DNA from: Octopus bimaculoides
Lineage: Eukaryota
Direction of reading: 5' to 3'
Assembly (NCBI RefSeq): GCF_001194135.2
Contig: NC_068988.1
Location: 38,169,450 to 38,233,449 of the forward strand
DNA: 64,000 nucleotides
Part shown: positions 2,080 through 51,047 of the stretch, one piece after another
Layout: every line of letters starts with the position of its first letter
Numbering within the stretch: the first letter of the stretch is position 1
The notes under the pieces: generated by a model
Told to the model about the DNA's origin: nothing
The model's input: only the letters and a program-made list of their open reading frames with translations
Database searches by the model: none
Position numbers and translations under genes: made by a program

Positions 2080-2621
2080 CTCATGAACGAGGAGAGCATG
2101 GTGAAGAATCCAGTTCTTAAAAGTCCTCCCTCATGCACTTCAAAACTTCACAGTTGAACTCTCAATTGATGGTCTGACCCTGGGGGACAAATTCTCGATA
2201 CACAATACCATATTTTCAAGGGTGACGTTCATGGCAGGTCTTTCAGATCGCTCATTGTCTTCTAGGGGCGTTCTTCCACTTTTGAAGCATCTGTTCCACT
2301 CAAAACAGTGCATATGACCCATTGCCTCATCGCCATAATCTTGCCAAAGCATGCTCAATGTCTCTGTAGCAGACTTCCCAAGTTTAATGCAAAATTTAAC
2401 ATTGGCTCTTTGCTCCAGCTTCCTGACCATGACAAAATCGCAGACTACAGCATACACGGAACAAAAACACAAATTTCACAACTTGTGAAGTAAACACAGC
2501 TATGTCACTTGGCACACTGCCTCATGAAGATCACTGCTAGCTCTCACTGTGCACACAACCATGTGCTGTCATCTGTTGGTGCACTACAGAACTAGTCCAG
2601 GAACTTTTTGATACCACCTTG
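2080..2621 (-). mobile_element. mariner remnant: one TIR, 5' region and N-terminal HTH
   Basis: VRKLEQRANVKFCIKLGKSATETLSMLWQDYGDEAM...FEW...FKSGRTPLEDNERSERP; TIR ...ACTAGTCCAGGAACTTTTTGATACCACCTTG|TA. Same family as 62646-63546. Confidence 0.85.
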
Positions 2622-5200: not shown

Positions 5201-5514
5201 TACAATTCATATCTTATTTTGCTAAGAATTTTTATCCTTGATATGGTTTCTAAAGCAGGTACAAGTGTCAGTGGTTGCACCACCAATCAATATCGATGCA
5301 GGACAAGATCAAAGTTTTTGATTCTGTATGGAAGCTATGTGATATCTGTTGTATTGATTAGTCAACTATTTATGATGTAAAGAAGAAGAGGAACAAAAAC
5401 AAAACAAAAAAAAAACAAAACAAAAAAAAACAAACAAATTATTGAAATTCTATAAATATGGTGATTTAAAATAGCAAATGAGTATCAGGAAATCTATGAG
5501 AAGTTGGTAAGAAT

Positions 5515-5745
5515 AATCTTTTCTCTTCTAGGCACAAGGCCCGAAATTTTTGGGGAGGGGGCCAATCGATTAGATCGACCCCAGTATGCAACTGGTACTT
5601 AATTTATTGACTTTGAAAGGATGAAAGGCAAAGTCATCCTTGGCGGAATTTGAACTCAGAACATAAAGACAGATAAAATATCACTAAGCATTTTGCCCGG
5701 CATGCTAACATTTCTGCCAGCTTTGCCGCCTTAAGTTGGTAAGAA
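5515..5745 (-). mobile_element. abundant tRNA-derived SINE, family S1
   Basis: Minus strand: AAGGCGGCAAAGCTGGCAGAA...TTCTGAGTTCAAATTCCGCCAAGGATGACTTTGCCTTTCATCC with B-box GAGTTCAAATTCC. Further copies ~11995-12160 (+), 18058-18137 (-), 29320-29500 (-), 32620-32790 (-), 46158-46375 (+), 55480-55620 (-), 61720-62155 (two, -). Confidence 0.8.
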
Positions 5746-6397
5746 TAATGAGCATGATTGAGTGGTGAGGGAATAAGTTTGTCAGCATCAGAGTGATGCT
5801 GTAGACTTGTCATGCATGTCTAACACCATTTTAGTGGAATAGGCCAGATTATTCCATACAGAACTTAAATTTAAAAATTATCATCATCATCATCAACATC
5901 ATCATCATCATATTCATCATCATCATCATCATCATCATCATTTAGCATCTGCTTTCCATGCTGGCATGAGTTAGACAGTTTGACCGAAACTGGTAAGCTG
6001 GAGAGCTGCACCAAGTTCCAATCTTATTTGGCATGGTTTCTATGGCTGGATGCCCACCCTTCTGAATGCCAACCACTCCAAGAGTGTAATGGGTGTCTCG
6101 ACTATGATTTCACTTGGGTCTTCACTTGACGGGTCTTCTCAAGCATGGCATATTGCCAAGGGTCTCTGTCACTTGTCAATGCCTCCATGAGGCCCACCGT
6201 TTGATGGGTGCTTTTTATGTGCCACCAGCATTGTGTTTAAAGGTGTGGCTGTGTGGGAAGAAGCTTGTTTTCCAACCACAAGGTTCTAGGTTCAGTTCAA
6301 TTGCATGGCACCTTAGGCCAGTGTCTTCTACTATAACTTCAGGCAGATCAAAGCCTTGTGAGTGGGTTTGGTAGACAGAAACTGAAAGAAGCCCGCT

Positions 6398-6570: not shown

Positions 6571-8080
6571 TTTGAATTGACTATGTATGCAATAGATCCT
6601 GCTTTATAAATCCACTGATAATAAATCCACCCACTTAATATATCCAAAATAGGTTGGGATGGAATTTTTACACATAAAATCTCTCATTTAATAAATCCAA
6701 ATCATCACTTAATAAATCCAGTTATTGCTATTTCTTTCTAAAGTTTCAGCAAGTGGCAGTGAATGAATGAAATGTTTTTTTTTCACTCTTAAATACTGAC
6801 AGGTAGGCTCCAGCAGCCACTGCTACCCAGCTGTCATGTGGTTCACTCCATCATCCAAAAATAGATCAATAAATATGTAGTAGCTAGTGGTAGCTGCTGG
6901 AGCCTACCATACAACCTTGTCATTCAAGTAAAAAAGAAGGCTCTGGGACACCTCCTGTCAAAATTACATACCCTTCTCATTCATTGGATAATGGAGTGTA
7001 CCATGTGACAGCTGGCTGGTTGTGGCTGCTGAAGCCTACCTGTCGGTATTTAAGTGCAAAAAAACACATTATTCATCATTCACGAAGAGAGGCAGATACA
7101 CACACAAGTTGTTCAAAATGTTCAAAATGAAAAGAGAGGGGCAGGCTTGGGAATTTCAAGAGGTCTGCTCCAGAATTTTCTAAAGAATGAGGATGACTTT
7201 CGTGCTAAAGAACATGGCGGCAGTTCATCAAAGAGAAAGTGCCAACGAAAGGGAAAAGACCACCAGATAGACTATGCTCTCTATGATTGGTTTCCATTTA
7301 TTTGCTCGAGAAATATCCCCATCAATGGCCTGATCCTAATGCACAAAGTCAACACCATTGCTCAAGCTGCTGGATACAATTTTAAGGCATCCAAAGGTTG
7401 GTTTTACTGTTGGCAAAAAAAACATGGTTCTAAAAGATAAGCTTTGTAGTTCAGTAGTTCACATTTTCCTCTTTAGAGAACACAAACTAAACATTTCATA
7501 CATTGCAGGTGACGCAGCTGATGTTGATGGAGCCTATCAGTTTCATGAGACAACCATGCAGCTTCTTTTGAAATCATATCAGTCAAGGACATCTATAATG
7601 CCGATGAAACTGGGATCTACTTTCATGCATTATCAAGGAATACATATGTAGACAAGAGTTGCAAGAAAACTATGAGGGCTTTAAGATGGCAAAGGACCAT
7701 ATGACCTTGATGGTGGCTTGCAACATGAATGGAGACAAAGAAGGCTTGCTCTTAATCAGAAAGGCTGGTTCATCAAGATGTTTCAAAAATGTCAAAATGC
7801 TTCCCATTCAGTATGACCTTTCAACCAATGTTTGGATGACAGAAAAAAATGTACGGAAGATGGCTCAGATCTTGGGATCGTCATTTGCAGGAATCTAGAA
7901 GACAAGTGGTGGTCCTCCTTGACAATTGCTCTTCTCATGTAGTCATCGATTATCTCAAAGATATCACTTTAAAATTTCTTCCTCCCAACACAACATCAGT
8001 GCTGCAGCCCTGTGACATGGGGATAATGAAGACCTTGAAAGCCTACTTCAGACATGAAATGCAGGAGAAGACCATTGATG

Positions 8081-8610
8081 GAGTAAAGATTTTTGCCAAT
8101 ATAACATGGCAGTCCTGGTTTAGGATGAATGTTGCTGTAATTTAGTCCCAGGAGAGATGGTCTCCAGCTGGCTATATGACACAATCTGTGTCCTTATATT
8201 TTCAAACATGGGAATCTAGCACCCTCACTCAGCTCAAAACAATATCTGTGCATTGCGATTTCCAGGTTATTTCCCTTCATCAGCACAGAATAATTGTTTG
8301 GCTAGAGGTGGCGCTGCCAAATTCTTGCTTGAAATATATAGTTTTCTAAGTGACAACTAGTCACTGATCTATAAATTAGAAAATTACTATTTTTAAATCT
8401 CACAAGAGATATTCAGCAACAGTACTTTGGAGTAAAGATTTTTGCCAACATAACATGGCAGTACTGTCATATAGCCAGCTGGAGACGATGTCTCCTGGGG
8501 CAACATTCGTCCTAAACGAGGACTGCCATGTTATGTTGGCAAACAATCTTTACTCCAAAGTACTGTTGTTGAATATCTCTCGTTGTGAGATTTAAAAATA
8601 GTAATTTTCT
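8081..8610 (-). mobile_element. 530-bp insertion with 13-bp TSD, ~349-bp tandem period, inverted segment and hammerhead-like motif
   Basis: Flanked by AAGACCATTGATG (8068-8080) and AAGATCATTGATG (8611-8623). 8080-8113 repeats at 8429-8462. 8464-8612 is the reverse complement of segments ~8376-8462 and ~8080-8181. Confidence 0.8.
8245..8289 (-). ncRNA. candidate type I hammerhead ribozyme (mutated)
   Basis: TCTGTG-CTGATGA-AGG-GAAATAA-CCT-G-GAAA-T-CGCA-A-T-G-CACAGA: 6-bp stem I, CUGAUGA core, 3-bp stem II, minimal stem III. Position 17 is G and there is one extra G before GAAA. Confidence 0.55.
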
Positions 8611-9386
8611 AAGATCATTGATGTTATGGAAGACACTGAATGTGACATTTTTGCCCAAGAAGTTGCAAAACAGATCACCATTTTGGATATCATGTATGTG
8701 TTAACTGTAGCTTGGAAGAAGGTTTCTAGCCAGACAATCAAACATTGTTGGAGCAAAGCAGGTTTTGTTTCGGCCAAAGAATCAAATGAAGCCATAGATG
8801 TTAATGAAGATTTGATCCTGCCTTCACCACCTACTGGATTGGCCAAAAAGCAATTCAAGAATTAGTTGTCCATAGATGATGGTGCATTTGTTGCTCCAGA
8901 GATGATCACTGGAGCAGAAAAACTAGATGAGATCATTCACGACATTCGGCAATATGAGAAGAAAACTGAAAGAGATGAAGATGATGATTCTGATGTTGAT
9001 GTTAATGAAAGAGTTCCAGCGCCTCCAACACCTGCTGAAATGAGACACAATCTCACTCGATTAGAAAATGGCCTTGAAAGTTTTGATTTCAGTGACTTGA
9101 ATCTTTTTAGAACTCTTAAGGAAAAAAATCAATGCAGAGTTGCAAACAAAGTGTGCAGCAAAGCAAACAACACTCGACAAATTTTTCATTCTATGACATT
9201 GTTTATAATGTTTTTATTTGTGTATTTGCATATGTATATATTTTAATAAATACACATGTTTAATCAATCAGCGAATTTTGTTCCTTCGGTTAATCAATCC
9301 CTTATTTAATAAATCCAAAATAGGCAGTCCCAAGATGAATTTATAAAGTGGGGTCCACTGTGTATAAATATATATATATATATATA

Positions 9387-9507
9387 TCCACATGGTTCTG
9401 GGTTCAGTCCTATTGCATGGCACCTTGAGAAAGTGTCTTCTGCTATAGTGTTGGGTAAACCAAGTCCTTGTGAGTGGATTTGGTGGATAGAAACTAAAAG
9501 AAGTCTG

Positions 9508-11990: not shown

Positions 11991-13373
11991 GGTCAGTGGT
12001 ATTTCATCTGTCTTCATACTCTGAGTTCAAAATCCGCCGAGGTCATCTTTGCCTTTCATCCTTTTGTGGTTTGATAAATTAAGTACCAATTAAACACTAG
12101 GGTTGATCTTGTCCCCCACCAACAAATTTCAGACCTTGTACCTATAGTAGAAAAGATTATTATTATTATTATTACTTTTTTTTTACTTTTAATCTGTATG
12201 TTTGTTACAGTCACCAGCTGAGAGACACCTAGTGTCCTGGGGCGAGTGAAGGATAAGAGATGTTACAATATGACTGAAAGCTTATAAAATTCAGCAGGCA
12301 AAACTTGATCCTATTTTCTACCAAATTGTAGCAATGGAACTCGATTTCTTGTGAGAAATCAGCTTAGAGGAAGAATTCAAATAATTTAGAAAAAATTTTT
12401 TAAATGTTGCATATCACCAGACAAACATATATAATATATAAGCACATAAATAGATAAACACTGAATAATTTATCACTTGGATTTTCTGGATTTTCAATTA
12501 CACAGATATTTCATGTTAAACTACTTTGTAATTGATTGCTATGTGAACTGATAGCCAAATCTGTAGGAGGAGCTGAGTGTGATAGCCACACAATACTTTA
12601 AATTCATATTTTATAAACAACTCCTTTATATGCACACACACATAGAAAGGGCACCCAGGCATAGAAACCATGCCAAAACAGACACCGAGTTTGGACAGCT
12701 CATTGGCAGGCTAGCTCCTGTCAAACTGTCTGACCCATGTCAGCATGGAAAATAGACATCAAATGATGATGATGATTATCATCATCACACACACATACAT
12801 GCATGTACATGCACACATGCAAGTGCATGCATGCACACGTGCACACACACACACACAAGGCAGATATAACACATCATCATCATCATCATCATCATCGTCG
12901 TCGTTTAACATCCGCTTTCCATGCTAGCATGGGTTGGACGATTTGACTGAGGACTGGTGAAACTAGATGGCTACACCAGCCTCCAATCTGATTTGACAGA
13001 GTTTCTACAGCTGGATGCCCTTCTTAACGCCAACCACTCAGAGAGTGTAGAGGGTGCTTTTACGTGCCACCGGCACGAAGGCCAGTCAGGCGGTACTGGC
13101 AATGGCCACGCTCAAAATGGTGTATTTTATGTGCCACCCACACAAGAGCCAGTCCAGGGACACTGGCAACGATCTCGCTCGAAAGTCCTTACACATGCCG
13201 CGGGCAAAAGTGCCAGAAAGGCGACGCTGGGCACAGGTGCCATCAAGATTTCGCTTTTGCTTGCCCCAGTAAGTCTTCACAAGCTGAGTTTCGTGTCCAA
13301 TGAAGGAGACGATGTTGGCATGGGTGCCAGTCGTCGAATTTAACTCGATTTCGATTTCACTTGCCTCAACAGG

Positions 13374-13410
<37 letters not shown>

Positions 13411-13715
13411 ATATATATATATATATAAGTAGATAGATAGATAGATAGATATATCGATGGATAGATGGATAAATATAGATTTATCTGAGTTTGTATAATT
13501 GTGTATAGAGTTCCACAGTTGACAATTGTGGAACACAACTGTCACTACATAAACCTGATGATTGCATAATGCATGAAAGTACTAGCTTATTCCAATATTG
13601 TAAAATTGTAAAAATTGCAAATGATAAAAACTGAAAACCAGACTTAGTGGAAATTTCTTTGATTTATATATATACAATATATATATATATACAATATATA
13701 TATATATATATATAT

Positions 13716-18540: not shown

Positions 18541-18856
18541 TCAGAGTGTAAGTATCTTGAGAGAAAAGCTGAACATTAGAAGCATCAGTTGTGGCGTGCA
18601 AGAGAGACGATTGCGCTGGTATGGACATGTGGTGAGAATGGAGGAGGATAGCTGCGTGAAAAAGTGCCACACCCTAACAGTTGAGGGAACCCGTGGAAGA
18701 GGTAGGCCCAGGAAGACCTGGGCTGAGGTGGTGAGGCAAGACCTTCGTACATTGGGCCTCACCGAGGCGATGACTACGGACCGAGACCTTTGGAAATGGG
18801 CTGTGCGTGAGAAGACCCGGCAAGCCAAGTAAGATCGTTGCCAGTGCCCCTGGACT
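18541..18856 (+). pseudogene. RTE LINE ORF2 C-terminus (5'-truncated, relatively young)
   Basis: LREKLNIRSISCGVQERRLRWYGHVVRMEEDSCVKKC...GRGRPRKTWAEVVRQDL...AVREKTRQAK*; open for ~95 codons, followed by a gap. Confidence 0.92.
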
Positions 18857-21410: not shown

Positions 21411-22759
21411 AGCACATTATTGGAAAACTAGGTGGGAAAAATAATACCCGAATACCAAAGGTAGAGTAATATTCTTTCATTAAAGTGGCAAAATTATCAC
21501 AAGACTGTTACTCAGAGTTTCACATCTCTGTTCATTGGACAGTTGTGATATATACATATCTGTTCAGTTTAGTTTAGGCAAAAGCCTTGCAATCTGCTCT
21601 TAAAAGCCCTTATGCTTGCAGTCGGCTACAACATGTTAATTCCATCTCCCAGAGTAATTCACTGGTATGGGTATACAATATGGAACTCATTTCAGCTTAG
21701 GATAAATATAATAACAATAATAACATGAGGATGGAAATTCATACAATTTCTTAATGCATCTAAACATATGTTTCTGCACCATACACATTCATTAGGTAAC
21801 AATGTTTCATATCCATATGATATTACTGAAGGTTACTCTTAATAGTTATGTATTTGAATATTTTCTCAGCTCCTTTTCTAGTGTGGGTGCTTCCTTGATT
21901 ACAAGTGCTTCCTCAGACCTTGCATTATTCAAATACATAATTATTAGGAGTAATTTTAAGTAATGTTATATGAATATGAAAAATTGTAATCTAATGATGG
22001 TGTGTGATGTAGAAATGTATGTTGTGGTGCATTAATAAAGCCTACGAACTTCCATCCTCATGTTATTATTGCTATTAGAAATCATTATTATTGTTATTAT
22101 TATTATTGATTCAGAGAGCAGTGCATGCCATCGAAGTGACACTGGGGTAAAATATACAAAGCCCAATATACCCATCATGACTACCAGTCTGATAAGGGTA
22201 CACTAGGCACATGTATCACAACCACATGTGTGCGACATGGTAATCACACATCAAGATAAACAATGCATGGACTTGCAGGTGGGGCCCAGTTAGAATTTTC
22301 TTCAGGTTGAGTAGCCCATCCTACTCAAAAACGTCCGTGAATAAGGGAAGTTTAAGATGTTGAATGAAACACCCATATTTTCAGAGGTGAATTATTCGAA
22401 CCCCTCAAAATTTCTCTCAACATATGGCTACGATGCTCCCCAACTACTTCTGCTCATGATCAGAGATGCACATATTGTCAGCCACTAAGGGACATGCTCA
22501 ACTGGTTAAAGTCAAACAATTGGCAAGCAAATCTGTGGTATTGAGTAGAATATTTGCTGTAGCCCATCTTTTATACCAAGGCAAAACATGTATGTGCAAT
22601 ATAACACTTCCAATCAATTAAGATAAGAAGCCACGAGAAAAGTGTCTGGTACTGCTATTATTATTATTTCTATTATTATTGTTGTTGTTGTTGTTGTTGT
22701 TGTTATTAATATTATTTTGCTGGGTATGATGAAAAGTGTCAGCTGTCCACAGTCAGCAG

Positions 22760-23573
22760 ATAAACTTTGACTCTGCTGTGCATGCACAGTTTTAATGTTC
22801 TAGCTCACTTCTACTGTTTATAGCAGTGCTTGGAAGGAATGTGTGTAATGCATGATCATTGCATTGACTACAACAAAGAAAGTTGAGCAGAGAATCTGCA
22901 TGAAATTTTTCCAAAAGCTTGGCGATACCTGTTCAGAGGCCTATGCAAACTTTCCAAAAATATTTCATCATTCTTGTTACAATCAAGATTTTGTGCAACG
23001 GAAATCCGAGTGTCTTTTTGGTCAGCTGAAAGCAGTTTTGGCACAAACTTGGCAGACATGCATCTCGTACCCAAATCTTCAGTGATAATGGACTAAACTG
23101 AACTGTAATTAATATGCACTTCTTCAGATAACTCACAGATGGTGATTTGACGATTTCCTCTCACAGCTGCACACACATCTGCAATGTTTTTCTCAGTTCT
23201 ACTGGTTGCGGGTCTCCCAGAGTGTTCGTCTCTATCAACATCTTTTTGGCCATCTTGGAAACGTCTGAATCGCTCATACACCTGTGCATAGCTCTTACAC
23301 TCCTCTTCATGCATATTCTGAAAATTTGTGTAGACCTCTGAGCAGGTATTGCTATGACAACTTTCTCTGTCATGGCCAATGTAACGATCACACACTACAC
23401 ATGCTCACGCTCTTTCCAAGCATTGTTGCAAACAGCAAAAGTAAGCTAGAATATTAAAACTTAGTGTGCATGCACAGCAGAGTCCAAGGTCAATCTGTAC
23501 CAAGCAGCTTCACTCTGTGCACTTTAGCATCGTTACTATGGCAACAATCCGGATACTTATTGATCAGACCTCG
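22760..23573. mobile_element. mariner remnant made of two convergent 5' ends
   Basis: Plus 22760-22960 (KVEQRICMKFFQKLGDTCSEAY) faces minus 22960-23573 (TIR ...TTGATCAGACCTCG|TA; VYERFRRFQDG...DEHSGRPATSRTEKNI...SAKFVPKLLS). Confidence 0.8.
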
Positions 23574-24082
23574 TACAGTCAATAACCTATGGTACATGTA
23601 AAGTATTTAAACAGGGTATCACAAAAATACTTGGTATGTTGTTTTCATTATTCTGATGAAGGCAACTAAGCTGAAAGAACTGCAGTCACTGCCAATCTAT
23701 TCTTTGTTAACATAATACATACATACATACATATATATACATATATATATATATACACACATATATATTTATATTTACATACACACATAGACATGTATCA
23801 TGTGAATATATGCATATATATAGGCTTGGTATAAATATATAAATATATGCATATATATATACATATATGTTTGTATGTGTGTATGTATGCATGAATATGA
23901 ATGAATAGATATTTATATACATTCATACACACATACACACATAAACACTCATAGACATGCCCACACACACATGTGTATATGCGGCATATTGTAAAAAAAT
24001 CAGCTGTATACAAACTTACACATCCGTTATTAATCTTAGTTTTTTTTTACTGGTTCAAGCCAGTTCATTGCTGATATGACGT

Positions 24083-24807: not shown

Positions 24808-26587
24808 ATGAAAGTTATGGAGAGGGTCATAGCCCAACTAATTAGGGAGAGAGTTAGTCTAGATGAGATGCAGTTTGGTTTTGTGCCAAGGAGAAATACC
24901 ATTGATGCTATATTTCTGGTAAGGCAGCTGCAGGAGAAGTACCTAGTCAACCTCTGTACTTGGTTTTTGCTGATTTGGAGAAAGCCTTTAACAGGTTCCC
25001 CTGATCCCTTATCTGGTGGTCAATGCAGAAACTAGGGATAGACGAGTGGTTGGCGAGAGCTGTAAAAGCCGTGTACAGGGATGCTGTTAGTAAGGTGAGG
25101 GTTGGCAATGAGTACAACAAAGAATTCAGGGTACAAGTAGGGGTTCACTAAGGATTGGTGCTCAGCCCCCACTTTTCATCATAATCTTCCAGGCAATAAC
25201 AGAGGAATTTAAGACAGGCTGCCCCTGGTAGCTCCTCTCTGCTGATGACCTTGCTCTTATAGCTGAATCACTACCGGAACTAGAGAAAAGTTTCAGATAT
25301 GGAAGCAAGGTCTAGAATCGAAGGGTCTTAGAATTAACCTAGCAACAAACAAAGTCTTAGTAAGTAGGAAGGCAGACAAATCACAAATCACTTTAGGTAG
25401 ATGGCCCTGCTCAATCTGAAGAAAAGGCATAGGTAGAAATTTCATGAGATGCACCCACTGTAAGATTTGGACACATAAGAGGTGCAGCAATATCAGAGGG
25501 AAAATAGCTTTTGTATGTGGAAGATGCACAGGTACAATAAATGCAGAAAATGTGCAGAAAATAGACTCCATCAGCTACCAGTGGGGTAAGCTAGAGGTAA
25601 TAGATAGCTTCTGTTATCTAGGTGACCAAGTCAGTAGCAGAAGTGGATGCTCTGAGAGCATAGTTGTGAGAATAAGAATAGGCTGGGCAAAGTTCAGAGA
25701 GCTCCTACCTCTGCTGGCAACAAAGGGCCACTCTTTCAGAGTGAAAGGCAAATTGTATGATGCTTGTGTGCGAACAGCTATGCTACACGACAGTGAAACA
25801 TAGGCTGTAACAGCTGAAGACATGCATAGGCTTGAAAAAAATGATGATAGCAAGCTTTGCTGGATGTGGAATGTCATTGTGCATGTTCAACAGAGTGTAA
25901 GCATCATGAGAGAAAAGGTGAGCATAAGCGGCATCAGATGTGGTGTCCAAGAGAGACGACTGTGCTGGTAAAGTCATGTGATGTGTATGGATGAGGACAG
26001 CTGTGTAAAGAAGTGCCAGTGTCTATCTATGGAGGGAGCCTGTGGTAAAGGTAGACCCAGAAAGACATGGGATGAGGTGGTGAAGCCTGATCTTTGAATT
26101 TTGGCCCTCACAGAGGCAATGACCGGTGACCAGGACCTTTGGTGATATGCTGTGCTTGAGAACACCTGTCAAGCCAAGTGAAATTGTAGTCGTGGCTGAC
26201 GCTAGTGTCACGTAACTCACACCTGTGCTGGTGACATAAAAAGCACATTTTGAGTGTTGGGCCCTATGGAGGCAAAGTGGCTGATGCCACTGACATGTGA
26301 AAAACACCTTTCAAGCATTGAGGAATGACCGAGACTTTTGGCATTATGTCGTTCTTGAAAAGAAGACCCATCAAGCCAAGTAAAATTGCAGTGGTAGCAG
26401 ATACTGGTTTCATGTAAAAGCACCCATTACACTCTTGGAGTGGTTGGCGTTAAGTAGGGTGTCCAGCTGTAGAAACCATGTCAAATCAGACTGGAGACTG
26501 GTGCAGCCTTCTAGCTTGCTAGCCCAGGTCAAACTGTCCAACCCATGCCAGAATGGACAATGGACATTAAATGATGATGATGATGAT
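24808..26587 (+). mobile_element. 5'-truncated RTE-clade LINE: RT, PHD-like finger, C-terminal domain, 3' UTR, (GAT)n tail
   Basis: QFGFVPRRNTIDAIFLVRQLQEKY, FADLEKAF, LLSADDLALIAES, FCYLG, GRPRKTWDEVVK; multiple stops and frameshifts. Confidence 0.93.
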
Positions 26588-26641: not shown

Positions 26642-28069
26642 CATGAGTACATATGCCTGAAAGAAGCTGGAGTGAAATGAAAGGAAATAAAACAGGTTGT
26701 TGGTACCAACAGGAAAAATATGCTTGGTTGAAAAATAAAAAAAATACTTAATGGAAGAAGGGCCATGGGGCTGGAATAAAGCAAAAACAGAAAGTTGATT
26801 ATAGGAGTGAGTTGTAGAGTTGAAATGTTGAGAGAAGGGTGCATAAGTGAATTCAGTGGAGTAGATTGTGAGATATGAGGCCTCTTCATCTATCTCCAAA
26901 GCATTGCAGAATTGACGTTTGATACAATATACACAGTATTTTCTTGCATGCAGTTTGATATAAGTATATGTCGTTTGTATTTTACTCAGTCCAGTCATTA
27001 TACCGTGGACATGCTGGGGCACCACAATGGATAATTTTTAGTCAAATGAATTGACTCAAATAGTTTTTTTTTAAAGCCAAGTACTTATTCTTTCAGTCTC
27101 TTTTTCCAAACTGGTAAGTTATGGGGATGTAAACACACCAACACCGGCTGTCAAGCTGTGGTGGGAGGACAAACACAGACACAAACACACAAACACACAC
27201 ACACACACACACACACATGTATATATGATAGGTTTCTTTTAGTTTCTGTCTACCAAATTCACTTATAAATCTGTGTTTGGCCTGAGGCTATAGAAAAAGA
27301 TACTTGCCCAAAGTGCCAAGCAGTGGAACTGAACCTGGAACCATTTGGTTGCGAAGCAGGCTTCTTACCACACAATCATGCCTATGCTTAGTATAAACAT
27401 GTGGTATAAACATTTAAATATTGTCACTATCTTTCCAAATCCTGCTGCATTTCGTATAGAATTTCTGGTTCTCCTAAGTCATCTTGGTGTATAAGATGAC
27501 CAACTTTTAATGACTATAAATTTTGGTCTGTAAACTTCCTACTTGTAAGCTGGAAAATATGATAATAATACTAGAGGTGTATGTGAATTGATTGGCTACT
27601 TGGATGGAGGATTTAGAGTTGTGTTAGTCTGTGATGTTAAAGATAACAGAACAGGTAAAAAACAGGTGTAACAATGGGAGTGAGCACAGGTGAATGTTCC
27701 AGGTTAGCAATAAAATGACTGTTGCTTACATTGCTTATCCACGGTCTATGTAAGCAATACTGTTAACTAGGTTATCTATGAGCAATCTATAGTGCTCGTT
27801 TCATAGGTGCCTAACAAATCTAATACAAGCTGTGCATTTGATAACTTGGTTTTCTGTCAGCCTGCTGGAGATCCCACTGTACTTACTGCTAGCACTGAGA
27901 ATACAGTTCATGCATGAATATGCACATAAAAAAAACACCAATTCATGTACACATATGTACATATTCAAATACATATCACCAAACACACAAACACCCACAC
28001 AAACGCATACACAAACACGTACGTGTATACACACTAGTCTCCGCCATCAGTCTAATTTTAGTTGTATTA

Positions 28070-29190: not shown

Positions 29191-30379
29191 CGAAGTACAG
29201 TGCCAGAAGAAGTGGTGGTGGTAGTAGTGGTGGTAATGGTGGTGGCAGCGGTAGTGGTAGAAATAACAACTGTGGTGGTGGTAGTGGTAATATCAGTTTC
29301 AAATTCTGGCACAATGCCGGCAATGTTGTGGGTGGGGGACGTCAATTACATCGACCACAGCACTCAGTTAGTACTTATTTCATTGACCCTGAAAGGATGG
29401 AAGGCAAAGTCGTCCTGAGCAGAATTTGAACTCAGAATGTAAAGATGGATGAAATGCAGCTAAGCATTTTTCCCCTGCATGCTAATGATTCTGCCAGCAC
29501 ACCACCATTGGTAGTGGTGATATTAGCAGTAGTAATGGTTGCGGTGGTGGTATTGATTGTGGTCATGATGACAGTAGTAGTTATAGTGGTGTCTCGGTGG
29601 TGGTAGTGGTGGTGGTTGTCATGGTAGAATGTATAGTGATGTTAGTGGTCATGATGATGGTGTTGGTGATGATTGTAGTGGTGTTGATGATGGTGGTGAC
29701 TATAGTGTTGGTAGTGATGGTGGTGGTGGTGATGGTGATGATGATAATGATAATGGTTGTAATGGTGATTGTGGTATTGGTGGTGGTGGTGGTGGTGGTA
29801 ATGGCAGTGGTGATGATGGTGGTGGTGGTGATGATGATAATAATAATGGTGGTGATGGTGATTGTGGTATTGATGGTAGTGGTGGTTGTGGTGGTGATGG
29901 CTGTGGTGATGGTGATGATGGTGGTGGTGGTGATGGTAGTGGTAATAATGATGGTTGTGATGGTGGTGGTGGTGCTGCTGCTGCTGGTGCTGGTAATGAT
30001 GGTGGTGATGACAATGGTGGTAATGGTCATGGTGATGATGATGATGATAATGATAATAGTGATGATGGTGATTGTGGTATTGATGGTAGTAGTGGTGGTG
30101 GTAACAGGGATGCTGATTGTAATGATGGTGGTAATGATGATGATGATGGTAGTGCTAAAAAAAAGTGAAGTAACTTTTGATTATCTATAAAACCTGAAAA
30201 ACAGGCTCCCTATTATGGAACCACATCAGGTGCTGCCGGTGCTGTCAGTCTTCAATTTATTGATTCGCACCAGACAAATATTTCATCAAAGATTCTTAAC
30301 ACTGAACTGAATGTACTTAATGATCTTTCTTCTCCAAAAAGTCAGAGAGTGAAAGAGTGAATAAGTAAGATAGACAAAG

Positions 30380-32030: not shown

Positions 32031-32854
32031 GAAAAAGATTGAGATATCAAAGTATGTGTGTGTGCATAAGGAACCTGAAAAACAAATCGAAAAGGTTGAA
32101 GCAGATTTTGATTGAAAAAAAATCAAAGAAAATATATTTATATAAATACATGCATATGTGAGTGTATGTATGTATGTGTGTGTGTGTGTTTGTGTGTGTG
32201 CATGTGCATGTGTGTGTGCATGTGCATGTGTGTCTGTGTGTTTCTTTAGATCTGCAATTATTTGCATTAAAATGCAGTGTGTAATATTGTAATCTGTTTG
32301 TCCTGTCGACACATTGTCTAAGCACTTTCTACCTTCAAATGTATGTGGAATAAGAGAGCCCTTACTCAAAAAGCAGTTGAGGAGTAGCATCAGAATGGCA
32401 TTCTTTGAGTTCCCTTTTACCAAATCCACCCATAAGCCTGTGGTTGGCCTGGGACTATAACAGAATATACATGCCCAAGATTCTGTGCAGTGCGACTGAA
32501 CCTAAAACCTTGTAACTTGGAAGTGAACTTCTCAAACACACAATCATATATAGATAGACAGAAGGAGAAGAAATAATAAATAATATGAATGCATGAATGG
32601 ACATAATTCTTTCTAATTGTAGCAAAAGGCCAGCAGTTTTACTGGGAAGAGCAAGTCACCTACATAGACCCCTGTATGTGAATAACATTATATTTTATCA
32701 ACCTTGAAAGGATGAATGGCAAACTTGACTTTCGTGGGATTTGCACTCAGAATGTAACAAGTCAGAAGAATTACCACAAAGCAGTTTTTCAATATTAGAA
32801 ATATTGCATTTTTGAATCCCTCAATGAGACTTGTACAGTAGCAGCATGATAAAG

Positions 32855-33056
32855 TGATGGTTTGTTGCCAACTTAATGTGGCAGTCCCAAGAAAGGAAAG
32901 AATACTACAGCTATTTAGCCTTAAGACACATTGTTTCCAGTTGGCTATGTCACACAAGCGTGTGTGGAAAGGGGAAACGATGTTTCCTAGGGCTAAATAG
33001 CAGTAGCATTCTTCCCTTTCCTGGGACTGCTACATTAAGTTGGCAACAAACCATCA
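32855..33056. mobile_element. hairpin MITE, ~84-bp arms
   Basis: TGATGGTTTGTTGCCAACTTAATGTGGCAGTCCCA... pairs with ...TGGGACTGCTACATTAAGTTGGCAACAAACCATCA. Confidence 0.8.
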
Positions 33057-33419
33057 GTTTTTGCAATGCTCTAATGATTTTGCTGGTCTAACCCCTTTGT
33101 AAATGAAATTAATGAAGGAGAATAAGGTTGTGAAAATGTAAGAGTAGGTCAGTGGGGAGATGGTTTTCAAATAAACAACAGGTTATGGTAAGTGAAATAG
33201 ATGAGGAAGTTCTCAGTCACACAGAAATTATTTGACTTCAAACTGCTGGAACACAGGAAATAAATGATGGTGCAAGGCTTCAAACTGAAAGATTAACAAT
33301 TACTGAAGAGAGACAGAAATCGATCTTATAATTTTCATTGAGTTAGGAGAAAGGGAGAGGGTGAGACAGAAAAATAAATAGGTAGGTGGATAGATAAATG
33401 ATAGATGGATAGGAAGATT

Positions 33420-34644: not shown

Positions 34645-37600
34645 ATATTTATGTTAAAGGAATACTCACTTTATTTTTGATATGCTCAGCTCAGAAATGT
34701 TTGAGATACTTGCTCTTGCGCTTATGCATCCTGCTGGTCTCCCGTTGTAGGAACCAACAGTTGTCACCCATCATGTGTGGACTGAGCCGGTCTTGATACC
34801 TTATTTCCATCTCAGATATGTCCTGGTAGAACCTATCACTATGCTCATCACTAAGGGCACCAAGATTTGTTGGAAAAAATCGAGATGAGGATGCAAGAAG
34901 TGCATTTTTAGGGACATTCAGCATCCCATTCTTTCATACGCTGTTAGCATGTTGTTTATTAAATCAACATAGTGTTCAACTCTATGATTTCCAAGAAAGT
35001 CCTGGACAACTAACACAAATGAATCCCATGCTGTCAGCTCAACTGGATTCAGTTTACCTCTGAATTTGCTATCAGGTATCAATTCTCTGATCTTGGATCC
35101 AATGAAAATGCCTGCTTTCAGTTTTGCGTCACTTTTCTCTGCACCAAATTTTACTTATAGGTACTGGAACCCACAACCTTCATGTTTCATTGCTTTGACA
35201 AAGTTTTCATGAGGCCAAGTTTGATGTGAAGGGGTGGAAAGAAGATCTTTTTGCGGGTCTACCAGTAGCATATGCTGCACATTGTACCAACCAACTATGA
35301 GCTCCTCTCTCTTAGGCCAGTCTTTTACAGTGTAATGATTGCTGTCATCACGGTCATTCCAAATACACAAGCACATATTTTTGGTATATCCCAACTGCAG
35401 TCCTAGGAGGAGGATCAATCACCTTTAAATCACCACAAATATTTCACTTATGAACTGAGTAATTAACTCCTTTCAGAATGAGTTCCATCGATTCGTAAGT
35501 TTCTTCCATACCAACAAATGACCCACAGGAATGGAAGGTTTTTCATTACCATTATGTGACAACACACCTTACTTGAGTCTATAAACAATCTCCATTTGTT
35601 AGCCACATGCATGTGTCCTAGTTTTTGCATGACTGCATTAATGTCAGTAGAGAAACAAGCATTATTTTCTTGCTTGAAAAAGACAGAGAAACCTTAATGG
35701 CGAGAACAGGAAATGGAAATTTTCATACCTTGCTGTAGGAGATTCCATTGTTGTAGTTTCGATCCCAAAACTTCTGCTCTCTCCTTTGACAATGCTAGGT
35801 CTCTTACTAAATCATTCAAATTTTCTTGAGCCTGGCTCATTTATCTTAGGAGAGTCAGGGGGTTCATCATACGACATGTCAAGATTTTTAAGTGAAACAT
35901 GTGAGAGGGTAACTGGGTCAGGGTTCTCGAAGTTATGTGGGACCGGTTTTAGAGTAAACTTACAATCTGCATACATAATTTTTGCTTTAGTCTTCTTTGA
36001 GAAACTACTAATACTAGTCATGTAAAAAGTAACAATCAGAAACATACCATTGGTACAGCGAAAAGCATTCCCTTCCGTTTTCCATTCAGCCACTGTGTAA
36101 GCCCTGAGTAACTTATGGTGCAGAATTTATGAGGTGCCTACCTCTTGTCTTGGTCCCCAACTTTACACCTGAAATAATATTTATAGGCAGTTTTTAATTT
36201 GGTGGCAATGTTCTTCTGCTGGTCACACAGAGCAAATTTTCTGCAGACATAACAAAGGTTGTCTGGATGATTCACACTGCTTCTCCTATTCATGATTTAA
36301 CACAATGACCACAGTTAAAACAGTAACCACACACAGTGAGAGATACATATACCACACGTCATGGCAGTGCAAATGACACTGAGAGTTACCAAGAACAAAC
36401 TGACATATTTGGCATTACACACAATACGTCAGCGCCATCTATTGCTAAACTAAATAATAAACTTTCTCATCGTTTGTTTTATTGCTGTTTTTTCTTTAAT
36501 TTTGAATGAAGACCGCTTTCATTCTAGCAAATTTTATAACACATCCTATATCTAGCTAAAAGTATAGATATAATCTTGCACATGCACATAGCTCAAAATC
36601 CTGACATGCTAGAACAATTCTGAGTGCGGATTCGGAATCAGCATCCTTGATTTAGTCTTAGACACATGCTTTTACCCCAGTTGGCAAATCTTTGTTGTCC
36701 AGTATCATGTGATACTTTGGGCAAGTATATTCTTCTATTGCCCCAAGGTGACCAAAGGCTTGTGATTGGATTTGGTTGATGGAAACTGAAACAAGCCTGT
36801 CACACATATCTATATGTGTGTATGTGTGTGTGGGTGAGTGTATGTATATACATGTTAATGTGTGTGTATGTGTGTGTGTAGTGTGCATGTATATTCATCT
36901 GTGTGTTGTACCCTCTTGTCTTGACTTTGTGTGAGAGTTATGATTGAGTGCCACCATCATACAAGTGGCATCCTTTGTTTCCAATATTCTGTGAAAACAC
37001 ATCCACTGATGGAGAAACATTACCTTGTTTGGAAACAAATGAAAGTTAAATCTGCCTCAACTAATCTTGTCTGAACCATGCATACATGGAATAGTGGACA
37101 TTAAAACGATGATGGTGAGATTGAAGTTTATGAAGGTCAAGGAAAAAAATCACAGATTCAAGTTTTATAACAAATATTGTAACTAAAGAATTATTACATT
37201 AAATATTTTTATACTAAAATAAATGTTTGCATTTATTAACCCTTGTACTGTGATATAAAATTTTATGGTTATTCTAGTAATGCTGTTCAATATCGACCAA
37301 AATATAGAATTGATATTCTCTGTAAGTCACGTTGCCTCAATAAACATGACATATATCAACAAAAATTAGTTTCAAACATAACATTCCTTTATAAAAGATA
37401 GATTTATATATAAAACTGTTTTCAACAGTTAAGAGTAAAGAAATTTTGAGTGGAAATATTCTGCTTTCTGTGAAGATGTGTGACTTAGCAGTTAGGGTAT
37501 TCGGCTCATGATCATAAGGTCGTAAGTTCAATTCCTGGTGGTGCATTGTGTCCTTGAGCAAGACACTTTATTTCATGTTGCTCCAGTCCACTCTGTTGGC

Positions 37601-37789: not shown

Positions 37790-38745
37790 GAAGAAATACT
37801 GCTTGGCATTTTGTCTGGTATGGTAACAATTCTGCCACCCAGCTACCTTACTAATGACTAATATTACTTTACTCTAATAAGGCAGTGAGCTGGTAGTATC
37901 GTTAACACACCAGGCAAGCTGCTTAAGTGGTATTTCATCTGTCTGCATTTTGATTTCAAATTTTGCTGAGGATGACTTTGCCTTTCATCCTTTAGGGGGT
38001 CAACAAAATAAGTAGCATTTGAACACTGGGGTCGATGTAATCATACTTTACCCCTCCCCGAAAACTGCTGGCCTTGTATTGAGATTCAAAACCAACATTA
38101 CTTTAATCTAAAGCAGCAAGCTGGCAAAAATGTTAGCACAGATGGACAAAATGCTTAGCGGTATTTCGTCTGCCGCTACGTTCTGAGTTCAAATTCCGCC
38201 ATGGTCGACTTTGCCTTTCATCCTTTCAGTTACGCATTGGGGTCAATATAATTGACTTAACCTGTTTGTCTGTCCTTGCTTGTCCCCTCTGTGTGTAGCC
38301 CCTTGTGGGAAGTAAAGAAATAAGAAACATTAGCACACTGGCCACAACTGCTTACTGGCATTTTGTTCATTCTTACTTTCTGAGTTCAAATTCTACCAAG
38401 GTTGACTTTACCTTTCATCTAATTGGTGTTACTAAAGTACTGGTGTTGCTGTAATCAACTTGCCCCCTCCCCTCAAAAAAAAAAAAAAACCTGCTGGTTC
38501 TGTGTCAAAATTTCAAACTATTATTTGAAGGCAGAGAGCTGACTGAGCTAATAGCACACTTGGCAAAATGCATAGTAGCACCTCGTCCATCTTTATGTTT
38601 TGAGCTCAAATTCTACTGAGGTCAACTTTGCCTTTCGTCTTTTTGGGGTAAATGAAATAAGTATCAGTTGAGCACTGGGGTTGATGTAATCAACTTGCCC
38701 CTCCCTCAAAATTGCTGGCCTTGTGCCAAAATTTGACACTGATAT
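37790..38745 (+). repeat. tandem array of 4-5 S1 SINE copies
   Basis: Units start at about 37880, 38110, 38325 and 38528; a decayed opposite-strand copy follows at 38760-38940. Confidence 0.8.
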
Positions 38746-43370: not shown

Positions 43371-44625
43371 TATATNNNNNNNNNNNNNNNNNNNNNNNNN
43401 NNNNNNNNNNNNNNNNNNNNNNNNNNNNNNNNNNNNNNNNNNNNNNNNNNNNNNNNNNNNNNNNNNNNNNNNNNNNNNNNNNNNNNNNNNNNNNNNNNNN
43501 NNNNNNNNNNNNNNNNNNNNNNNNNNNNNNNNNNNNNNNNNNNNNNNNNNNNNNNNNNNNNNNNNNNNNNNNNNNNNNNNNNNNNNNNNNNNNNNNNNNN
43601 NNNNNNNNNNNNNNNNNNNNNNNNNNNNNNNNNNNNNNNNNNNNNNNNNNNNNNNNNNNNNNNNNNNNNNNNNNNNNNNNNNNNNNNNNNNNNNNNNNNN
43701 NNNNNNNNNNNNNNNNNNNNNNNNNNNNNNNNNNNNNNNNNNNNNNNNNNNNNNNNNNNNNNNNNNNNNNNNNNNNNNNNNNNNNNNNNNNNNNNNNNNN
43801 NNNNNNNNNNNNNNNNNNNNNNNNNNNNNNNNNNNNNNNNNNNNNNNNNNNNNNNNNNNNNNNNNNNNNNNNNNNNNNNNNNNNNNNNNNNNNNNNNNNN
43901 NNNNNNNNNNNNNNNNNNNNNNNNNNNNNNNNNNNNNNNNNNNNNNNNNNNNNNNNNNNNNNNNNNNNNNNNNNNNNNNNNNNNNNNNNNNNNNNNNNNN
44001 NNNNNNNNNNNNNNNNNNNNNNNNNNNNNNNNNNNNNNNNNNNNNNNNNNNNNNNNNNNNNNNNNNNNNNNNNNNNNNNNNNNNNNNNNNNNNNNNNNNN
44101 NNNNNNNNNNNNNNNNNNNNNNNNNNNNNNNNNNNNNNNNNNNNNNNNNNNNNNNNNNNNNNNNNNNNNNNNNNNNNNNNNNNNNNNNNNNNNNNNNNNN
44201 NNNNNNNNNNNNNNNNNNNNNNNNNNNNNNNNNNNNNNNNNNNNNNNNNNNGTATGTATGTATGTATGTATGTATGTATGTATGTATGTATGTATCTATT
44301 TATATGTATATGTGTGTGTATGTGTGTATGATTATATAGATATAATTATAATTAAGGATACTGAGAAACAGTACCAACAAGCTAACAATGGAAGTCAAAT
44401 GACTCTAAAACCACACATATATTATATATGTATGTGTGCGTGTATATATATATAGGTGCACGCATGGCTGTGTGGTAAGAAGTTTGCTTCCCAACTATAT
44501 GGTTCTGGGTTCAGTCCCACTGCATGGCACCTTGGGCAAGTATCTTCTACAATAGCCTCAAGCTGACCAAAGCCTTGTGAGTGGATTTAGTAGATGGAAA
44601 CCGAAAGAAGCCTGTTGTATATGTT

Positions 44626-50269: not shown

Positions 50270-51047
50270 ATATCAGTTAATGGTTCTTACATTGTTACCG
50301 AGTAACAGTATTCAAACATGTGAAGAAGGGAAACAGCATGATAATTTACAAACAATGATATTTGTAAATATACTGCAAAAAAGCAGAAAAGCCCACAAGT
50401 AAAAACGTTAGAAAATGCATTTTAATTCATGTATTTAGCTGTCATATGTTAGAATATATGATATATTCCTCTATTCACATGCAAAATCATGTTGTATTTC
50501 ACATTCTCGGTAGCATATTTGTAAAACACACACACAAACAAGTGACAGTGGCTTTTGGTAATAAGATTTTAATGATGATGTATAACTCATTTTTTCTTTA
50601 ATTTGTCAGTATGCAGCAATCTTTCAGGAGGGTCTGGCATATCCATTACTTGGGAAACAAACAGCTTAAGCCAATTGGTATATATGAAATTCACCATATA
50701 TTTTTCCGTATTTACCATCCTTGAAAACTCACTTATATTAGGCAACTTCCTAATATCTAGTGTGAAACTAATTGGTAAGGTCAGGTGTAATGGATCTATA
50801 TTACTGTATACATTGATTTATATATATTCCTCCTCTCACTCTCTGGGAGAGAAGCACAAGCACATACACAGACATATACACACACGGCAGTAACTTCCGC
50901 CTACCAAATTCAATCACAAAGCTTCGGTCGGCTCGGGGCTATAGCAGAAGACACTCGCCCAAGGTGCTACGCAGTGGGACTGAACCCGAAGCCATGTAGC
51001 TGGGAAGCAAGCTTCCTAACCACACAGCCATGCCCATATATATATAT

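What the first reader, a model, noticed from the sequence alone, without database searches (positions are those of the whole stretch)
8081..8610. Retrozyme-like insertion: ~349-nt circularly permuted monomer with a hammerhead motif, an inverted segment and a 13-bp TSD
Seen in sequence: the insertion splits the Tigger transposase between AAGACCATTGATG and AAGATCATTGATG. It has one ~349-bp unit (8080-8428), the start of a second unit (8429-8462), and an inverted block (8464-8612). The inverted block reads continuously across the end-to-start junction of the unit, so the template was tandem or circular. The minus strand carries a type I hammerhead-like fold (8289-8245: 6-bp stem I, CUGAUGA, short stem II, GAAA, minimal stem III). 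Established: metazoan retrozymes are short non-coding hammerhead-containing monomers that form circular RNAs and are thought to use Penelope-like machinery, and PLE insertions often have inverted ends. Inference: this is a retroposed copy of a cephalopod retrozyme-like circRNA. This copy has G at position 17 and an extra G before GAAA, so it is probably inactive.
Basis: partly seen in the sequence, partly recalled or inferred. Interest (0 to 1): 0.85.

Follow-up and report, generated by a model that had tools for sequence, protein, structure and literature searches.

The report
Dead hammerhead-bearing retroelement copy in octopus Tigger
A 530-bp piece of non-coding DNA that jumped into an old Tigger transposon of an octopus-like genome looks like a decayed copy of a "retrozyme", a small parasitic element built around a self-cutting hammerhead RNA; this kind of element is already known in other molluscs, so it is a neat example and not a new phenomenon.

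Summary
A 530-bp insertion (8081-8610) sits between two copies of a 13-bp target sequence (12/13 identical) inside a Tigger/pogo transposase pseudogene. Removing it restores the DDE_1 domain, and three Octopus paralogues carry the site uninterrupted. The insert has one 349-bp unit, 37 nt of a second unit, and a 148-nt inverted block that reads across the unit junction.

The minus strand carries a type-I hammerhead-like motif at 8289-8245 with two core defects.

The bare motif is not significant: 0.63 such hits are expected per random window, Rfam gives no hit, and my own covariance model gives E = 0.13. Motif plus distal helix is expected about 0.001 times per window.

Best reading (confidence 0.6): a dead retroposed copy of a non-LTR retrozyme-like element, copied from a template at least 1.29 units long, with Penelope-style or twin-priming anatomy.

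Not shown: a canonical hammerhead in the family consensus, tandem arrays, circular RNA, or the reverse transcriptase used. I found only one other, partial relative (32789-33080). This is a new member of a known kind, of moderate interest.

The parts
8068..8080 (.). Left copy of the 13-bp target-site duplication, AAGACCATTGATG.
   Evidence: The paralogues have a single copy of this sequence.
8081..8429 (-). One full 349-bp unit. The sense strand is taken to be the hammerhead strand, which is minus. 37% G+C, no ORF longer than 57 aa.
8245..8289 (-). Type-I hammerhead-like motif. It has a 6-bp proximal stem I, CUGAUGA, a 3-bp stem II (or 4 positions with an A.G at 10.1/11.1), GAAAU, a 2-bp stem III with tetraloop CGCA, U16.1, and G17 where A, C or U (H) is required.
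8200..8334 (-). Imperfect 42-bp rod (8200-8250 paired with 8284-8334). Its 33-nt apical loop (8251-8283) is the hammerhead core. The rod includes a 7-bp distal stem I helix, AAACAAU/AUUGUUU, beyond a 3-nt/1-nt internal loop.
8430..8466 (-). Start of a second unit, joined head to tail. 35/37 identical to 8081-8117.
8465..8612 (+). Inverted block, the reverse complement of unit 296-349 followed by unit 1-101. It reads across the unit junction. It shows 2-nt microhomology at both of its ends (TG at 8465-8466, AA at 8611-8612).
8611..8623 (.). Right copy of the target-site duplication, AAGATCATTGATG.
7054..9246 (+). Host element: a Tigger/pogo transposase pseudogene (HTH_Tnp_Tc5 and DDE_1 domains) that the insertion interrupts.
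32789..33080 (.). Second, diverged relative, about 69% identical. Unit 288-349 followed by unit 1-115, then an inverted copy, forming a hairpin with 88-nt arms. The breakpoints differ from the first insertion, and it has no hammerhead part. Its exact ends are unresolved.

Best explanation
The insertion is a dead, retroposed copy of a short non-coding element built around a type-I hammerhead. It is a non-LTR retrozyme-like element of an octopus genome, probably related to the pseudo-LTRs of Penelope-like elements.

Shown:
- A staggered cut in a Tigger copy was filled in, giving a 13-bp duplication.
- The DNA copied in is longer than one 349-nt period and needs at least 1.29 unit lengths of template.
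- Read on the hammerhead strand, the insert is an inverted 5'-side copy (148 nt) followed by a direct copy (386 nt).
- Each of the three junctions has 2 nt of microhomology.
- The direct copy runs straight through the predicted cleavage site (8250/8251).

Inferred:
- The template was an RNA that was uncleaved at that site or had been re-ligated, meaning a multimeric transcript of a tandem array or a circular RNA copied by rolling reverse transcription.
- Reverse transcription was primed on the nicked target by microhomology at the 8081 end.
- A second priming or template switch produced the inverted part, as in Penelope-type insertions or L1 twin priming.
- The hammerhead was canonical in the source and has since picked up G17 and a defect at the base of stem II.
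- With a single, mutated hammerhead, this locus could never release a monomer.
For: Insertion and non-coding nature:
- The duplication and empty site are verified.
- Layout and junction continuity are verified.
- The same 349-to-1 junction is contiguous in a second locus (E = 1e-17; nhmmer 1e-7).
- The longest ORF is 57 aa and has no relative among 5.8 billion proteins.
- The unit is 37.2% G+C.

Hammerhead motif:
- CUGAUGA, GAAAY and RU are intact, and stem III has 2 bp plus a tetraloop. The same 6-bp stem I, internal loop and distal helix can be read in the published coral retrozyme sequence (PMC7229834 supplement).
- A descriptor allowing only this copy's two defects finds 1 hit in the window and 0 in 60 random windows.
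- The probability that a random 33-nt loop on a given stem reads as a hammerhead core is 6e-5.
- The probability of the distal 7-bp helix is 0.00165.

RNA structure:
- The 79-nt region has z = -3.8.
- The circular monomer on the hammerhead strand has MFE -101.3 kcal/mol against -71.4 +/- 4.9 for shuffles, z = -6.05. The antisense strand has z = -2.6.

Decay:
- The internal duplicates differ by about 4-5% (6/144, 2/37, 1/13). About one substitution per 45 nt is therefore expected since insertion, which fits two defects.

Literature:
- Metazoan retrozymes are 150-450-bp low-GC repeats with type-I hammerheads and duplications longer than 4 bp. Mussel units are 350-390 bp (PMC7229834).
- Penelope-like insertions are partial tandems, often with an inverted 5'-truncated copy at the 5' end (PMC8557442).
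- Octopus vulgaris has recently active Penelope families (PMC13282606).
- 235 Rfam Hammerhead_1 hits were reported in the giant squid (PMC6962438).
Against: - Rfam reports no hammerhead at gathering score in the window. It also reports none at E <= 10 in 901 nt or in 106 nt.
- The covariance model built from four published retrozyme hammerheads gives only 13.8 bits, E = 0.13. It ranks below a hit at 13549-13590 that has no stem I. The best score in 62 kb of other Octopus DNA is 11.2 bits.
- If any two defects are allowed, the bare motif is expected 0.63 times per random window, and a second such hit exists at 21504-21543.
- The rod is almost entirely Watson-Crick (39 of 42 pairs). It is therefore a DNA-level palindrome and gives little strand-specific evidence of selection on RNA.
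- Only 1.1 direct units are present and there is no tandem array.
- The only other relative lacks the hammerhead part.
- None was found in 62 kb of O. bimaculoides and O. vulgaris DNA.
- Ends near unit position 296/297 recur in both loci, which random priming on a circle does not predict.
Confidence: 0.6

Rival explanations
1. An ordinary non-autonomous retroposon (SINE-like, or a transcript of a short tandem repeat) inserted by a LINE reverse transcriptase, with L1-type twin priming producing the inversion. The hammerhead-like loop is a chance resemblance on a hairpin that exists for other reasons.
For: - A 13-bp duplication and an inversion with microhomology junctions are classic for target-primed reverse transcription with twin priming (established knowledge; junctions).
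- Hammerhead covariance models do not separate the motif from noise.
- 0.63 two-defect motifs are expected per window.
- A possible preferred end at unit 296/297, next to a T4 run, would suit a defined transcript end.
- LINE reverse-transcriptase fragments lie in the window.
Against: - There is no A-rich or microsatellite tail at either end, no B box, and only A-box-like matches with 2 mismatches.
- ARAGORN finds no tRNA-like gene.
- The two loci end at different unit positions on the direct copy.
- The joint chance of the motif and the distal helix is about 0.001 per window, and 6e-5 given the hairpin.
Confidence: 0.2
2. A heavily 5'-truncated fragment of an autonomous Penelope-like element, meaning its pseudo-LTR or 3' region carrying tandem hammerhead repeats. 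It would not be a separate non-autonomous retrozyme family.
For: - Penelope-like pseudo-LTRs carry hammerheads, sometimes in tandem, and insertions are strongly 5'-truncated with tandem and inverted parts (PMC8557442; PMC7229834).
- A 2026 preprint places retrozymes within pseudo-LTR phylogeny (10.64898/2026.07.22.740005).
Against: - The head-to-tail period is 349 nt, far shorter than a Penelope-like element.
- Stem III (2 bp plus a tetraloop) and the long stem I look like the canonical retrozyme type described in PMC7229834, not the minimal Penelope type.
- No Penelope-like reading frame stood out among the window's ORFs of 90 aa or more. These ORFs were not scanned against a domain library.
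Confidence: 0.12
3. A DNA-level event: a foldback or MITE-like DNA transposon, or a templated patch copied in during double-strand-break repair.
For: - Long inverted repeats are present in both related loci.
- All junctions show microhomology.
Against: - The two termini are not inverted repeats of each other.
- A 13-bp duplication is longer than those of the known cut-and-paste superfamilies (established knowledge).
- Two diverged loci share the same sequence family, so it is a mobile family and not a one-off patch.
Confidence: 0.06
4. An assembly artefact, such as a chimeric palindromic read.
For: The window is a gapped scaffold with 3750 N.
Against: - The arms differ by 6 substitutions and 3 indels.
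- The structure is embedded between matching Tigger flanks with a target duplication.
Confidence: 0.02

Closest known systems
Metazoan non-LTR retrozymes (Cervera and de la Pena 2020, PMC7229834), for example the Mytilus galloprovincialis Mg353 repeat
   Same: - Short non-coding unit: 349 bp here, 350-390 bp in mussel.
- Low G+C.
- Type-I hammerhead layout with a 2-bp stem III plus tetraloop and a long stem I with an internal loop.
- Highly self-paired RNA.
- Head-to-tail unit junction.
- Duplication longer than 4 bp.
- Mollusc host.
   Different: - Only 1.1 direct units are present, not dimers to multimers.
- The hammerhead fails the RUH rule (AUG) and has a stem II base defect.
- Circular RNA, self-cleavage and copy number are untested.
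- There is no sequence similarity to the published mussel unit outside the core.
Penelope-like element insertions and their pseudo-LTR hammerheads (PMC8557442; Cervera and de la Pena 2014, as cited there)
   Same: - Partial tandem plus an inverted truncated copy on the 5' side, relative to the hammerhead strand.
- A hammerhead is present.
- A duplication of variable, fairly long size.
   Different: - There is no reverse-transcriptase or GIY-YIG reading frame.
- The period is 349 nt.
- The inverted copy does not share its outer end with the direct copy (unit 297 against unit 1).
- The hammerhead is not of the minimal Penelope type.
L1 twin-priming inversions
   Same: An inverted 5' segment joined to a direct 3' segment, with microhomology at the junction, inside one target-site duplication.
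   Different: - There is no poly(A) tail.
- The template is a short periodic RNA.
- The inverted and direct parts overlap on the template unless it spans at least 2.27 units.
Plant LTR retrozymes (PMC4918200)
   Same: Non-autonomous, hammerhead-bearing, and propagated through circular RNA.
   Different: Plant retrozymes have type III hammerheads in LTRs, a primer-binding site and polypurine tract, 4-bp duplications and G+C above 55%. None of these applies here.

Membership tests
Metazoan non-LTR retrozyme | Type-I hammerhead with the conserved core CUGANGA / GAAAY / RUH and perfect helix topology. This is the criterion in the PMC7229834 supplement. | tested here: not met
   CUGAUGA and GAAAU are present, but RUH reads AUG (G17). 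Stem II has an extra G, or an A.G at 10.1/11.1. Rfam gives no hit and my own covariance model gives 13.8 bits. This applies to this copy only. The family consensus could not be tested.
Metazoan non-LTR retrozyme | Tandem repeats (dimers to multimers) of 150-450 bp, each unit carrying a hammerhead. | tested here: inconclusive
   The 349-bp unit is in the right size range and a head-to-tail junction is present. However, there are only 1.1 direct units and one hammerhead. Tandem arrays elsewhere in the genome could not be searched.
Metazoan non-LTR retrozyme | Non-coding, with low G+C (below 45-50%). | tested here: met
   ORFs are 57 aa or shorter, and the longest one has no protein relative. G+C is 37.2%.
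Metazoan non-LTR retrozyme | Highly self-paired RNA. | tested here: met
   The circular monomer on the hammerhead strand has z = -6.05 and 64% of its bases paired. The rod has 42 bp.
Metazoan non-LTR retrozyme | Self-cleavage and accumulation as circular RNA. | not testable with these tools
   This needs in vitro transcription and RNA data. This copy is predicted to be inactive because of G17.
Metazoan non-LTR retrozyme | A dispersed multi-copy family in the genome. | tested here: inconclusive
   One further partial relative lies in the window. None was found in 62 kb of other Octopus DNA. None was found in the metagenome, GTDB or viral collections either, apart from one chance match, L001.
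Penelope-type insertion | Partial tandem with an adjacent inverted 5'-truncated copy at the 5' end, plus a target duplication. | tested here: met
   On the hammerhead strand the order is inverted 148 nt, then direct 386 nt, within a 13-bp duplication. Caveat: the inverted copy's outer end is unit 297, not the 3' end of the direct copy.
Penelope-type insertion | Sequence shared with an autonomous Penelope-like element that has a reverse-transcriptase and GIY-YIG reading frame. | not tested
None stood out among the window's ORFs of 90 aa or more, which were not scanned against a domain library.
tRNA-derived SINE | A tRNA-like head with A and B boxes, and a LINE-type 3' tail. | tested here: not met
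   ARAGORN finds none. There is no B box within 2 mismatches and no tail.

The most novel reading that the evidence does not exclude
The 349-bp unit represents a still uncharacterised cephalopod retrozyme family. Its consensus would carry an active hammerhead and be expressed as abundant small circular RNAs in octopus tissues. This copy would then preserve a clean integration footprint (duplication, more than one unit, inverted 5' copy, microhomology junctions) showing that retrozyme RNAs longer than one unit are reverse-transcribed into the genome by Penelope-type machinery. That step is currently only hypothesised.
Probability: 0.3. Interest if true: 0.55.

Novelty: new member of a known kind. 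Interest (0 to 1): 0.4.

Why it matters
Retrozymes are thought to spread through circular RNAs copied by Penelope-like reverse transcriptases, but that integration step has not been shown directly. This copy has exact boundaries verified against an empty site. It is longer than one unit, it runs through the cleavage site without a break, and it has a Penelope-like tandem-plus-inverted layout. If the family proves to be a real retrozyme, this copy is a small piece of direct evidence on how the step works. It would also extend retrozymes to cephalopods. For this locus the practical result is modest. It is one more decayed repeat nested in another repeat, and it has no predicted activity.

Tried and rejected
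Searches for known RNA families:
- Rfam at gathering score on the whole window, and at E <= 10 on 901 nt and on 106 nt, gave no hammerhead. The only hits were hairpins scoring as microRNA precursors and a C-box-like snoRNA fragment. A C/D snoRNA is rejected because there is no D box.

Searches for more copies:
- A protein-word search with the 57-aa ORF over the hammerhead region found nothing.
- Two metagenome scans found nothing for the S-region 21-mer. The hammerhead 21-mer gave one hit, L001, which is a bacterial-looking chance match with no GAAA after it.
- A GTDB scan and a viral scan found nothing.
- 62 kb of O. bimaculoides and O. vulgaris DNA, fetched through Tigger paralogues, contained no copy by nhmmer with the unit or with a 4-sequence S profile.
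- A third protein search, using a LINE reverse-transcriptase ORF to reach more octopus DNA, returned Octopus entries without contigs.
- Exact look-ups of three window ORFs were not on record.

Leads that turned out to be chance:
- The 14-mer at 32482 resembling stem I belongs to an unrelated common SINE.
- The 24-mer at 23653 resembling CUGAUGA plus stem II has no flanking homology.
- A shared outer end at unit 297 in both loci could not be settled. Two equally good alignments of the second locus disagree.

Rejected readings: tRNA-SINE, MITE, and assembly artefact.

Full report
**1. The observation**

AAGACCATTGATG lies at 8068-8080 and AAGATCATTGATG at 8611-8623, bracketing 530 bp. Three results show this is a true insertion.
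- Deleting 8081-8623 leaves the reading frame intact (…MQEKTID-V-MEDTE…). The spliced 157-aa product matches Pfam DDE_1 in one stretch, profile positions 60-177, E = 3.9e-24. An upstream ORF matches HTH_Tnp_Tc5.
- The closest named proteins are Tigger-derived proteins of Octopus bimaculoides and O. vulgaris, 74-86% identical.
- Three paralogous Tigger copies fetched from those genomes align across the site at 85-88% over about 750 nt, with no insertion. They carry the target sequence once, for example GAGAAGATCGTTAATGTTATGG.

So the host is an octopus-like genome, and the 13-bp repeat is a target-site duplication.

**2. Anatomy of the insert**

Unit position is defined as coordinate minus 8080. 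The insert has three parts.
- Unit 1-349 at 8081-8429.
- Unit 1-37 again at 8430-8466, 35/37 identical.
- The reverse complement of unit 296-349 followed by unit 1-101 at 8465-8612.

A global alignment of the inverted block to the forward sequence shows 138 matches, 6 mismatches and 3 indels, with no break at the 349-to-1 junction. Each of the three junctions has 2 nt of ambiguity or microhomology: TG at 8079-8080, TG at 8465-8466 and AA at 8611-8612.

The two outer ends are not inverted repeats of each other. There is no A-rich or microsatellite tail and no B box. ARAGORN finds no tRNA-like gene. ORFs are 57 aa or shorter, and the longest one has no relative in the 5.8-billion-protein collection. 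The unit is 37.2% G+C, the same as the window.

**3. A second relative**

blastn and nhmmer find one more related stretch, at about 32789-33080. A doubled unit aligns from 295 through 349 into 1-111 as one block (69% identity, E = 1e-17). The order '…349 then 1…' is therefore a native, contiguous sequence of the family and not an accident of this insertion.

This second locus is a hairpin with 88-nt arms that are 89% complementary. Its breakpoints differ from the first: forward to about unit 115, then inverted from about unit 85. In the first insertion the forward copy stops at 37 and the inverted copy starts at 101. The second locus has no counterpart of unit 116-287, where the hammerhead lies.

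It abuts a very common SINE. Its ends and target duplication could not be resolved, because two equally good alignments place its right end at unit ~332 or ~290. A profile of the four copies of this shared part of the unit (positions 288-349 plus 1-115; 'S' in the notes) finds nothing else in the window or in 62 kb of other Octopus DNA.

**4. The hammerhead-like motif**

On the minus strand, 8289-8245 reads UCUGUG CUGAUGA AGG GAAAUAA CCU G GAAA U CGCA A U G CACAGA. CUGAUGA, GAAAY and the R-U of RUH are intact. Stem III is A-U and U-A with a CGCA tetraloop. Stems II and III are closed and stem I is open, which makes it type I.

There are two defects. Position 17 is G where A, C or U is required. 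The stem II-GAAA junction has either a bulged G or, read another way, an A.G at 10.1/11.1 above G.U, G-C, G-C. PMC7229834 describes a comparable weak base, a U.U, for an axolotl hammerhead.

After a 3-nt/1-nt internal loop there is a 7-bp Watson-Crick helix, AAACAAU/AUUGUUU. In the minimum-free-energy fold the pairing runs on to a 42-bp rod, 8200-8250 with 8284-8334, whose 33-nt tip is exactly the hammerhead core. The same plan (6-bp stem I, internal loop, distal helix) can be read in the coral retrozyme sequence printed in the PMC7229834 supplement.

**5. Is the motif more than chance?**

The answer depends on the test, so all of them are listed.
- Rfam gives no hammerhead hit at gathering score, and none at E <= 10 on 901 nt or 106 nt. 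Those E-values are multiplied by 4227 families.
- I built a covariance model from the four experimentally cleaving retrozyme hammerheads in the PMC7229834 supplement. It places the motif second in the window at 13.8 bits, E = 0.13. The top hit, 15.2 bits at 13549-13590, has no stem I. The best score in 62 kb of control Octopus DNA is 11.2 bits. This is marginal.
- A descriptor that tolerates only this copy's two defects finds 1 hit in the window and none in 60 random windows. That descriptor is post hoc.
- A fairer descriptor allowing any two defects finds 2 hits in the window and 0.63 per random window. That scales to about 0.006 for a 530-bp target.
- Adding structure that neither descriptor used, a distal Watson-Crick helix of 7 bp or more occurs by chance with probability 0.00165. 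Motif plus helix is then expected about 0.001 times per window.
- Given a stem, a random 33-nt loop reads as a hammerhead core with two or fewer defects at 6e-5.

I conclude that the motif is probably a real hammerhead relic, at roughly three in four. The evidence is structural context, not a model score.

**6. RNA structure of the unit**

Folded as a circle, the hammerhead-strand monomer has an MFE of -101.3 kcal/mol, against -71.4 +/- 4.9 for dinucleotide shuffles (z = -6.05). The antisense strand has z = -2.6. This fits the 'highly self-paired' retrozyme RNAs of PMC7229834. However, 39 of the 42 rod pairs are Watson-Crick. The rod is therefore a DNA palindrome and says little about which strand matters.

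**7. Mechanism**

Shown:
- A staggered break was filled in, giving the 13-bp duplication.
- The copied sequence needs at least 450 nt of template (1.29 units). If the inverted part came from upstream of the direct part, as in twin priming, it needs 794 nt (2.27 units).
- The direct copy passes through the predicted cleavage site (8251/8250) without a break.
- All junctions show microhomology.

Inferred:
- The template was an RNA that was uncleaved or re-ligated at the hammerhead site, either a multimeric transcript or a circle.
- First-strand synthesis was primed at the 8081 end.
- A second priming or template switch gave the inverted segment.

Read on the hammerhead strand, the order is an inverted truncated copy and then a partial direct tandem. 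That is the arrangement published for Penelope-like elements and their non-autonomous derivatives (PMC8557442). L1-type twin priming gives the same picture, and the reverse transcriptase cannot be named from this locus.

The internal duplicates differ by 4-5%. About one substitution per 45 nt is expected since insertion, so the two hammerhead defects could be post-insertion decay. With one hammerhead and 1.1 units, the locus could not release a monomer even when it was new. The 2026 preprint defines an active retrozyme as one with a hammerhead in every repeat.

**8. Comparison with what is known**

The closest known kind is the metazoan non-LTR retrozyme. These are 150-450-bp low-GC repeats with type-I hammerheads and duplications longer than 4 bp, with 350-390-bp units in mussels. 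This copy meets the size, composition, non-coding, self-pairing and duplication features. It fails the strict core criterion (AUG where RUH is required). It is inconclusive for tandem arrays and copy number. Cleavage and circular RNA cannot be tested here.

Type-I hammerheads have already been counted in a cephalopod genome: 235 Rfam hits in the giant squid (PMC6962438). Octopus vulgaris has recently active Penelope families (PMC13282606). A cephalopod retrozyme would therefore be expected and not surprising.

**9. Verdict**

The most likely identity, at 0.6, is a dead retroposed copy of a retrozyme-like, hammerhead-bearing element. The main rival, at 0.2, is a LINE-mobilised repeat with a coincidental hammerhead-like hairpin. 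This is a new member of a known kind, with interest 0.4. The decisive test is a genome-wide consensus of the 349-bp unit, which the collections available here could not provide.

Noticed in passing
window 32395-32793, with copies at 5513-5694, 6278-6390, 9390-9502, 11996-12081, 27234-27379, 29376-29442, 36717-36794, 38142-38228, 44469-44609, 45484-45602, 46201-46289, 50902-51046, 57782-57871 and 62042-62119: A very common SINE-like repeat with at least 15 fragments in 64 kb. The copy at 32395-32793 stops short where the second retrozyme-like hairpin begins, so the hairpin may have inserted into it.
   Followed up: partly
window 32789-33080: The second relative consists only of the part of the unit shared with the first insertion (288-349 plus 1-115; 'S' in the notes), arranged as a hairpin. 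Its ends near unit 296/297 coincide with the outer end of the inverted block of the first insertion. This hints at a preferred terminus, '…AAUUUUCUAA' on the hammerhead strand, which includes a T4 run.
   Followed up: partly
window 13549-13590 (+) and 21504-21543 (-): Two other hammerhead-like matches. The first scores 15.2 bits with my own covariance model but has no stem I. The second has two core mismatches. I treated both as chance hits and used them as controls.
   Followed up: yes
window 23653-23676 (+): TTATTCTGATGAAGGCAACTAAGCTGAAAG shares 20 of 24 nt with the CUGAUGA-stem II part of the motif and lacks the extra G. There is no flanking homology and no stem I.
   Followed up: partly
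window 2140-2472 (-), 23093-23395 (-), 47912-48190 (-), 62701-63126 (-); 18557-18832 (+), 25444-25803 (+): Mariner-like transposase ORF fragments and LINE reverse-transcriptase tail ORFs. The 25444-25803 ORF is 80% identical to an O. bimaculoides protein.
   Followed up: partly
window 6759-6858 and 6984-7083: An inverted repeat of about 100 nt, 83% identical, just upstream of the Tigger reading frames. It may be part of the Tigger end region or another nested element.
   Followed up: no
L001 2097-2117 (metagenome contig Ga0138256_10000006): The only exact 21-mer match to the hammerhead region in the metagenome collection. The context looks bacterial and there is no further similarity, so it is a chance match.
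   Followed up: yes
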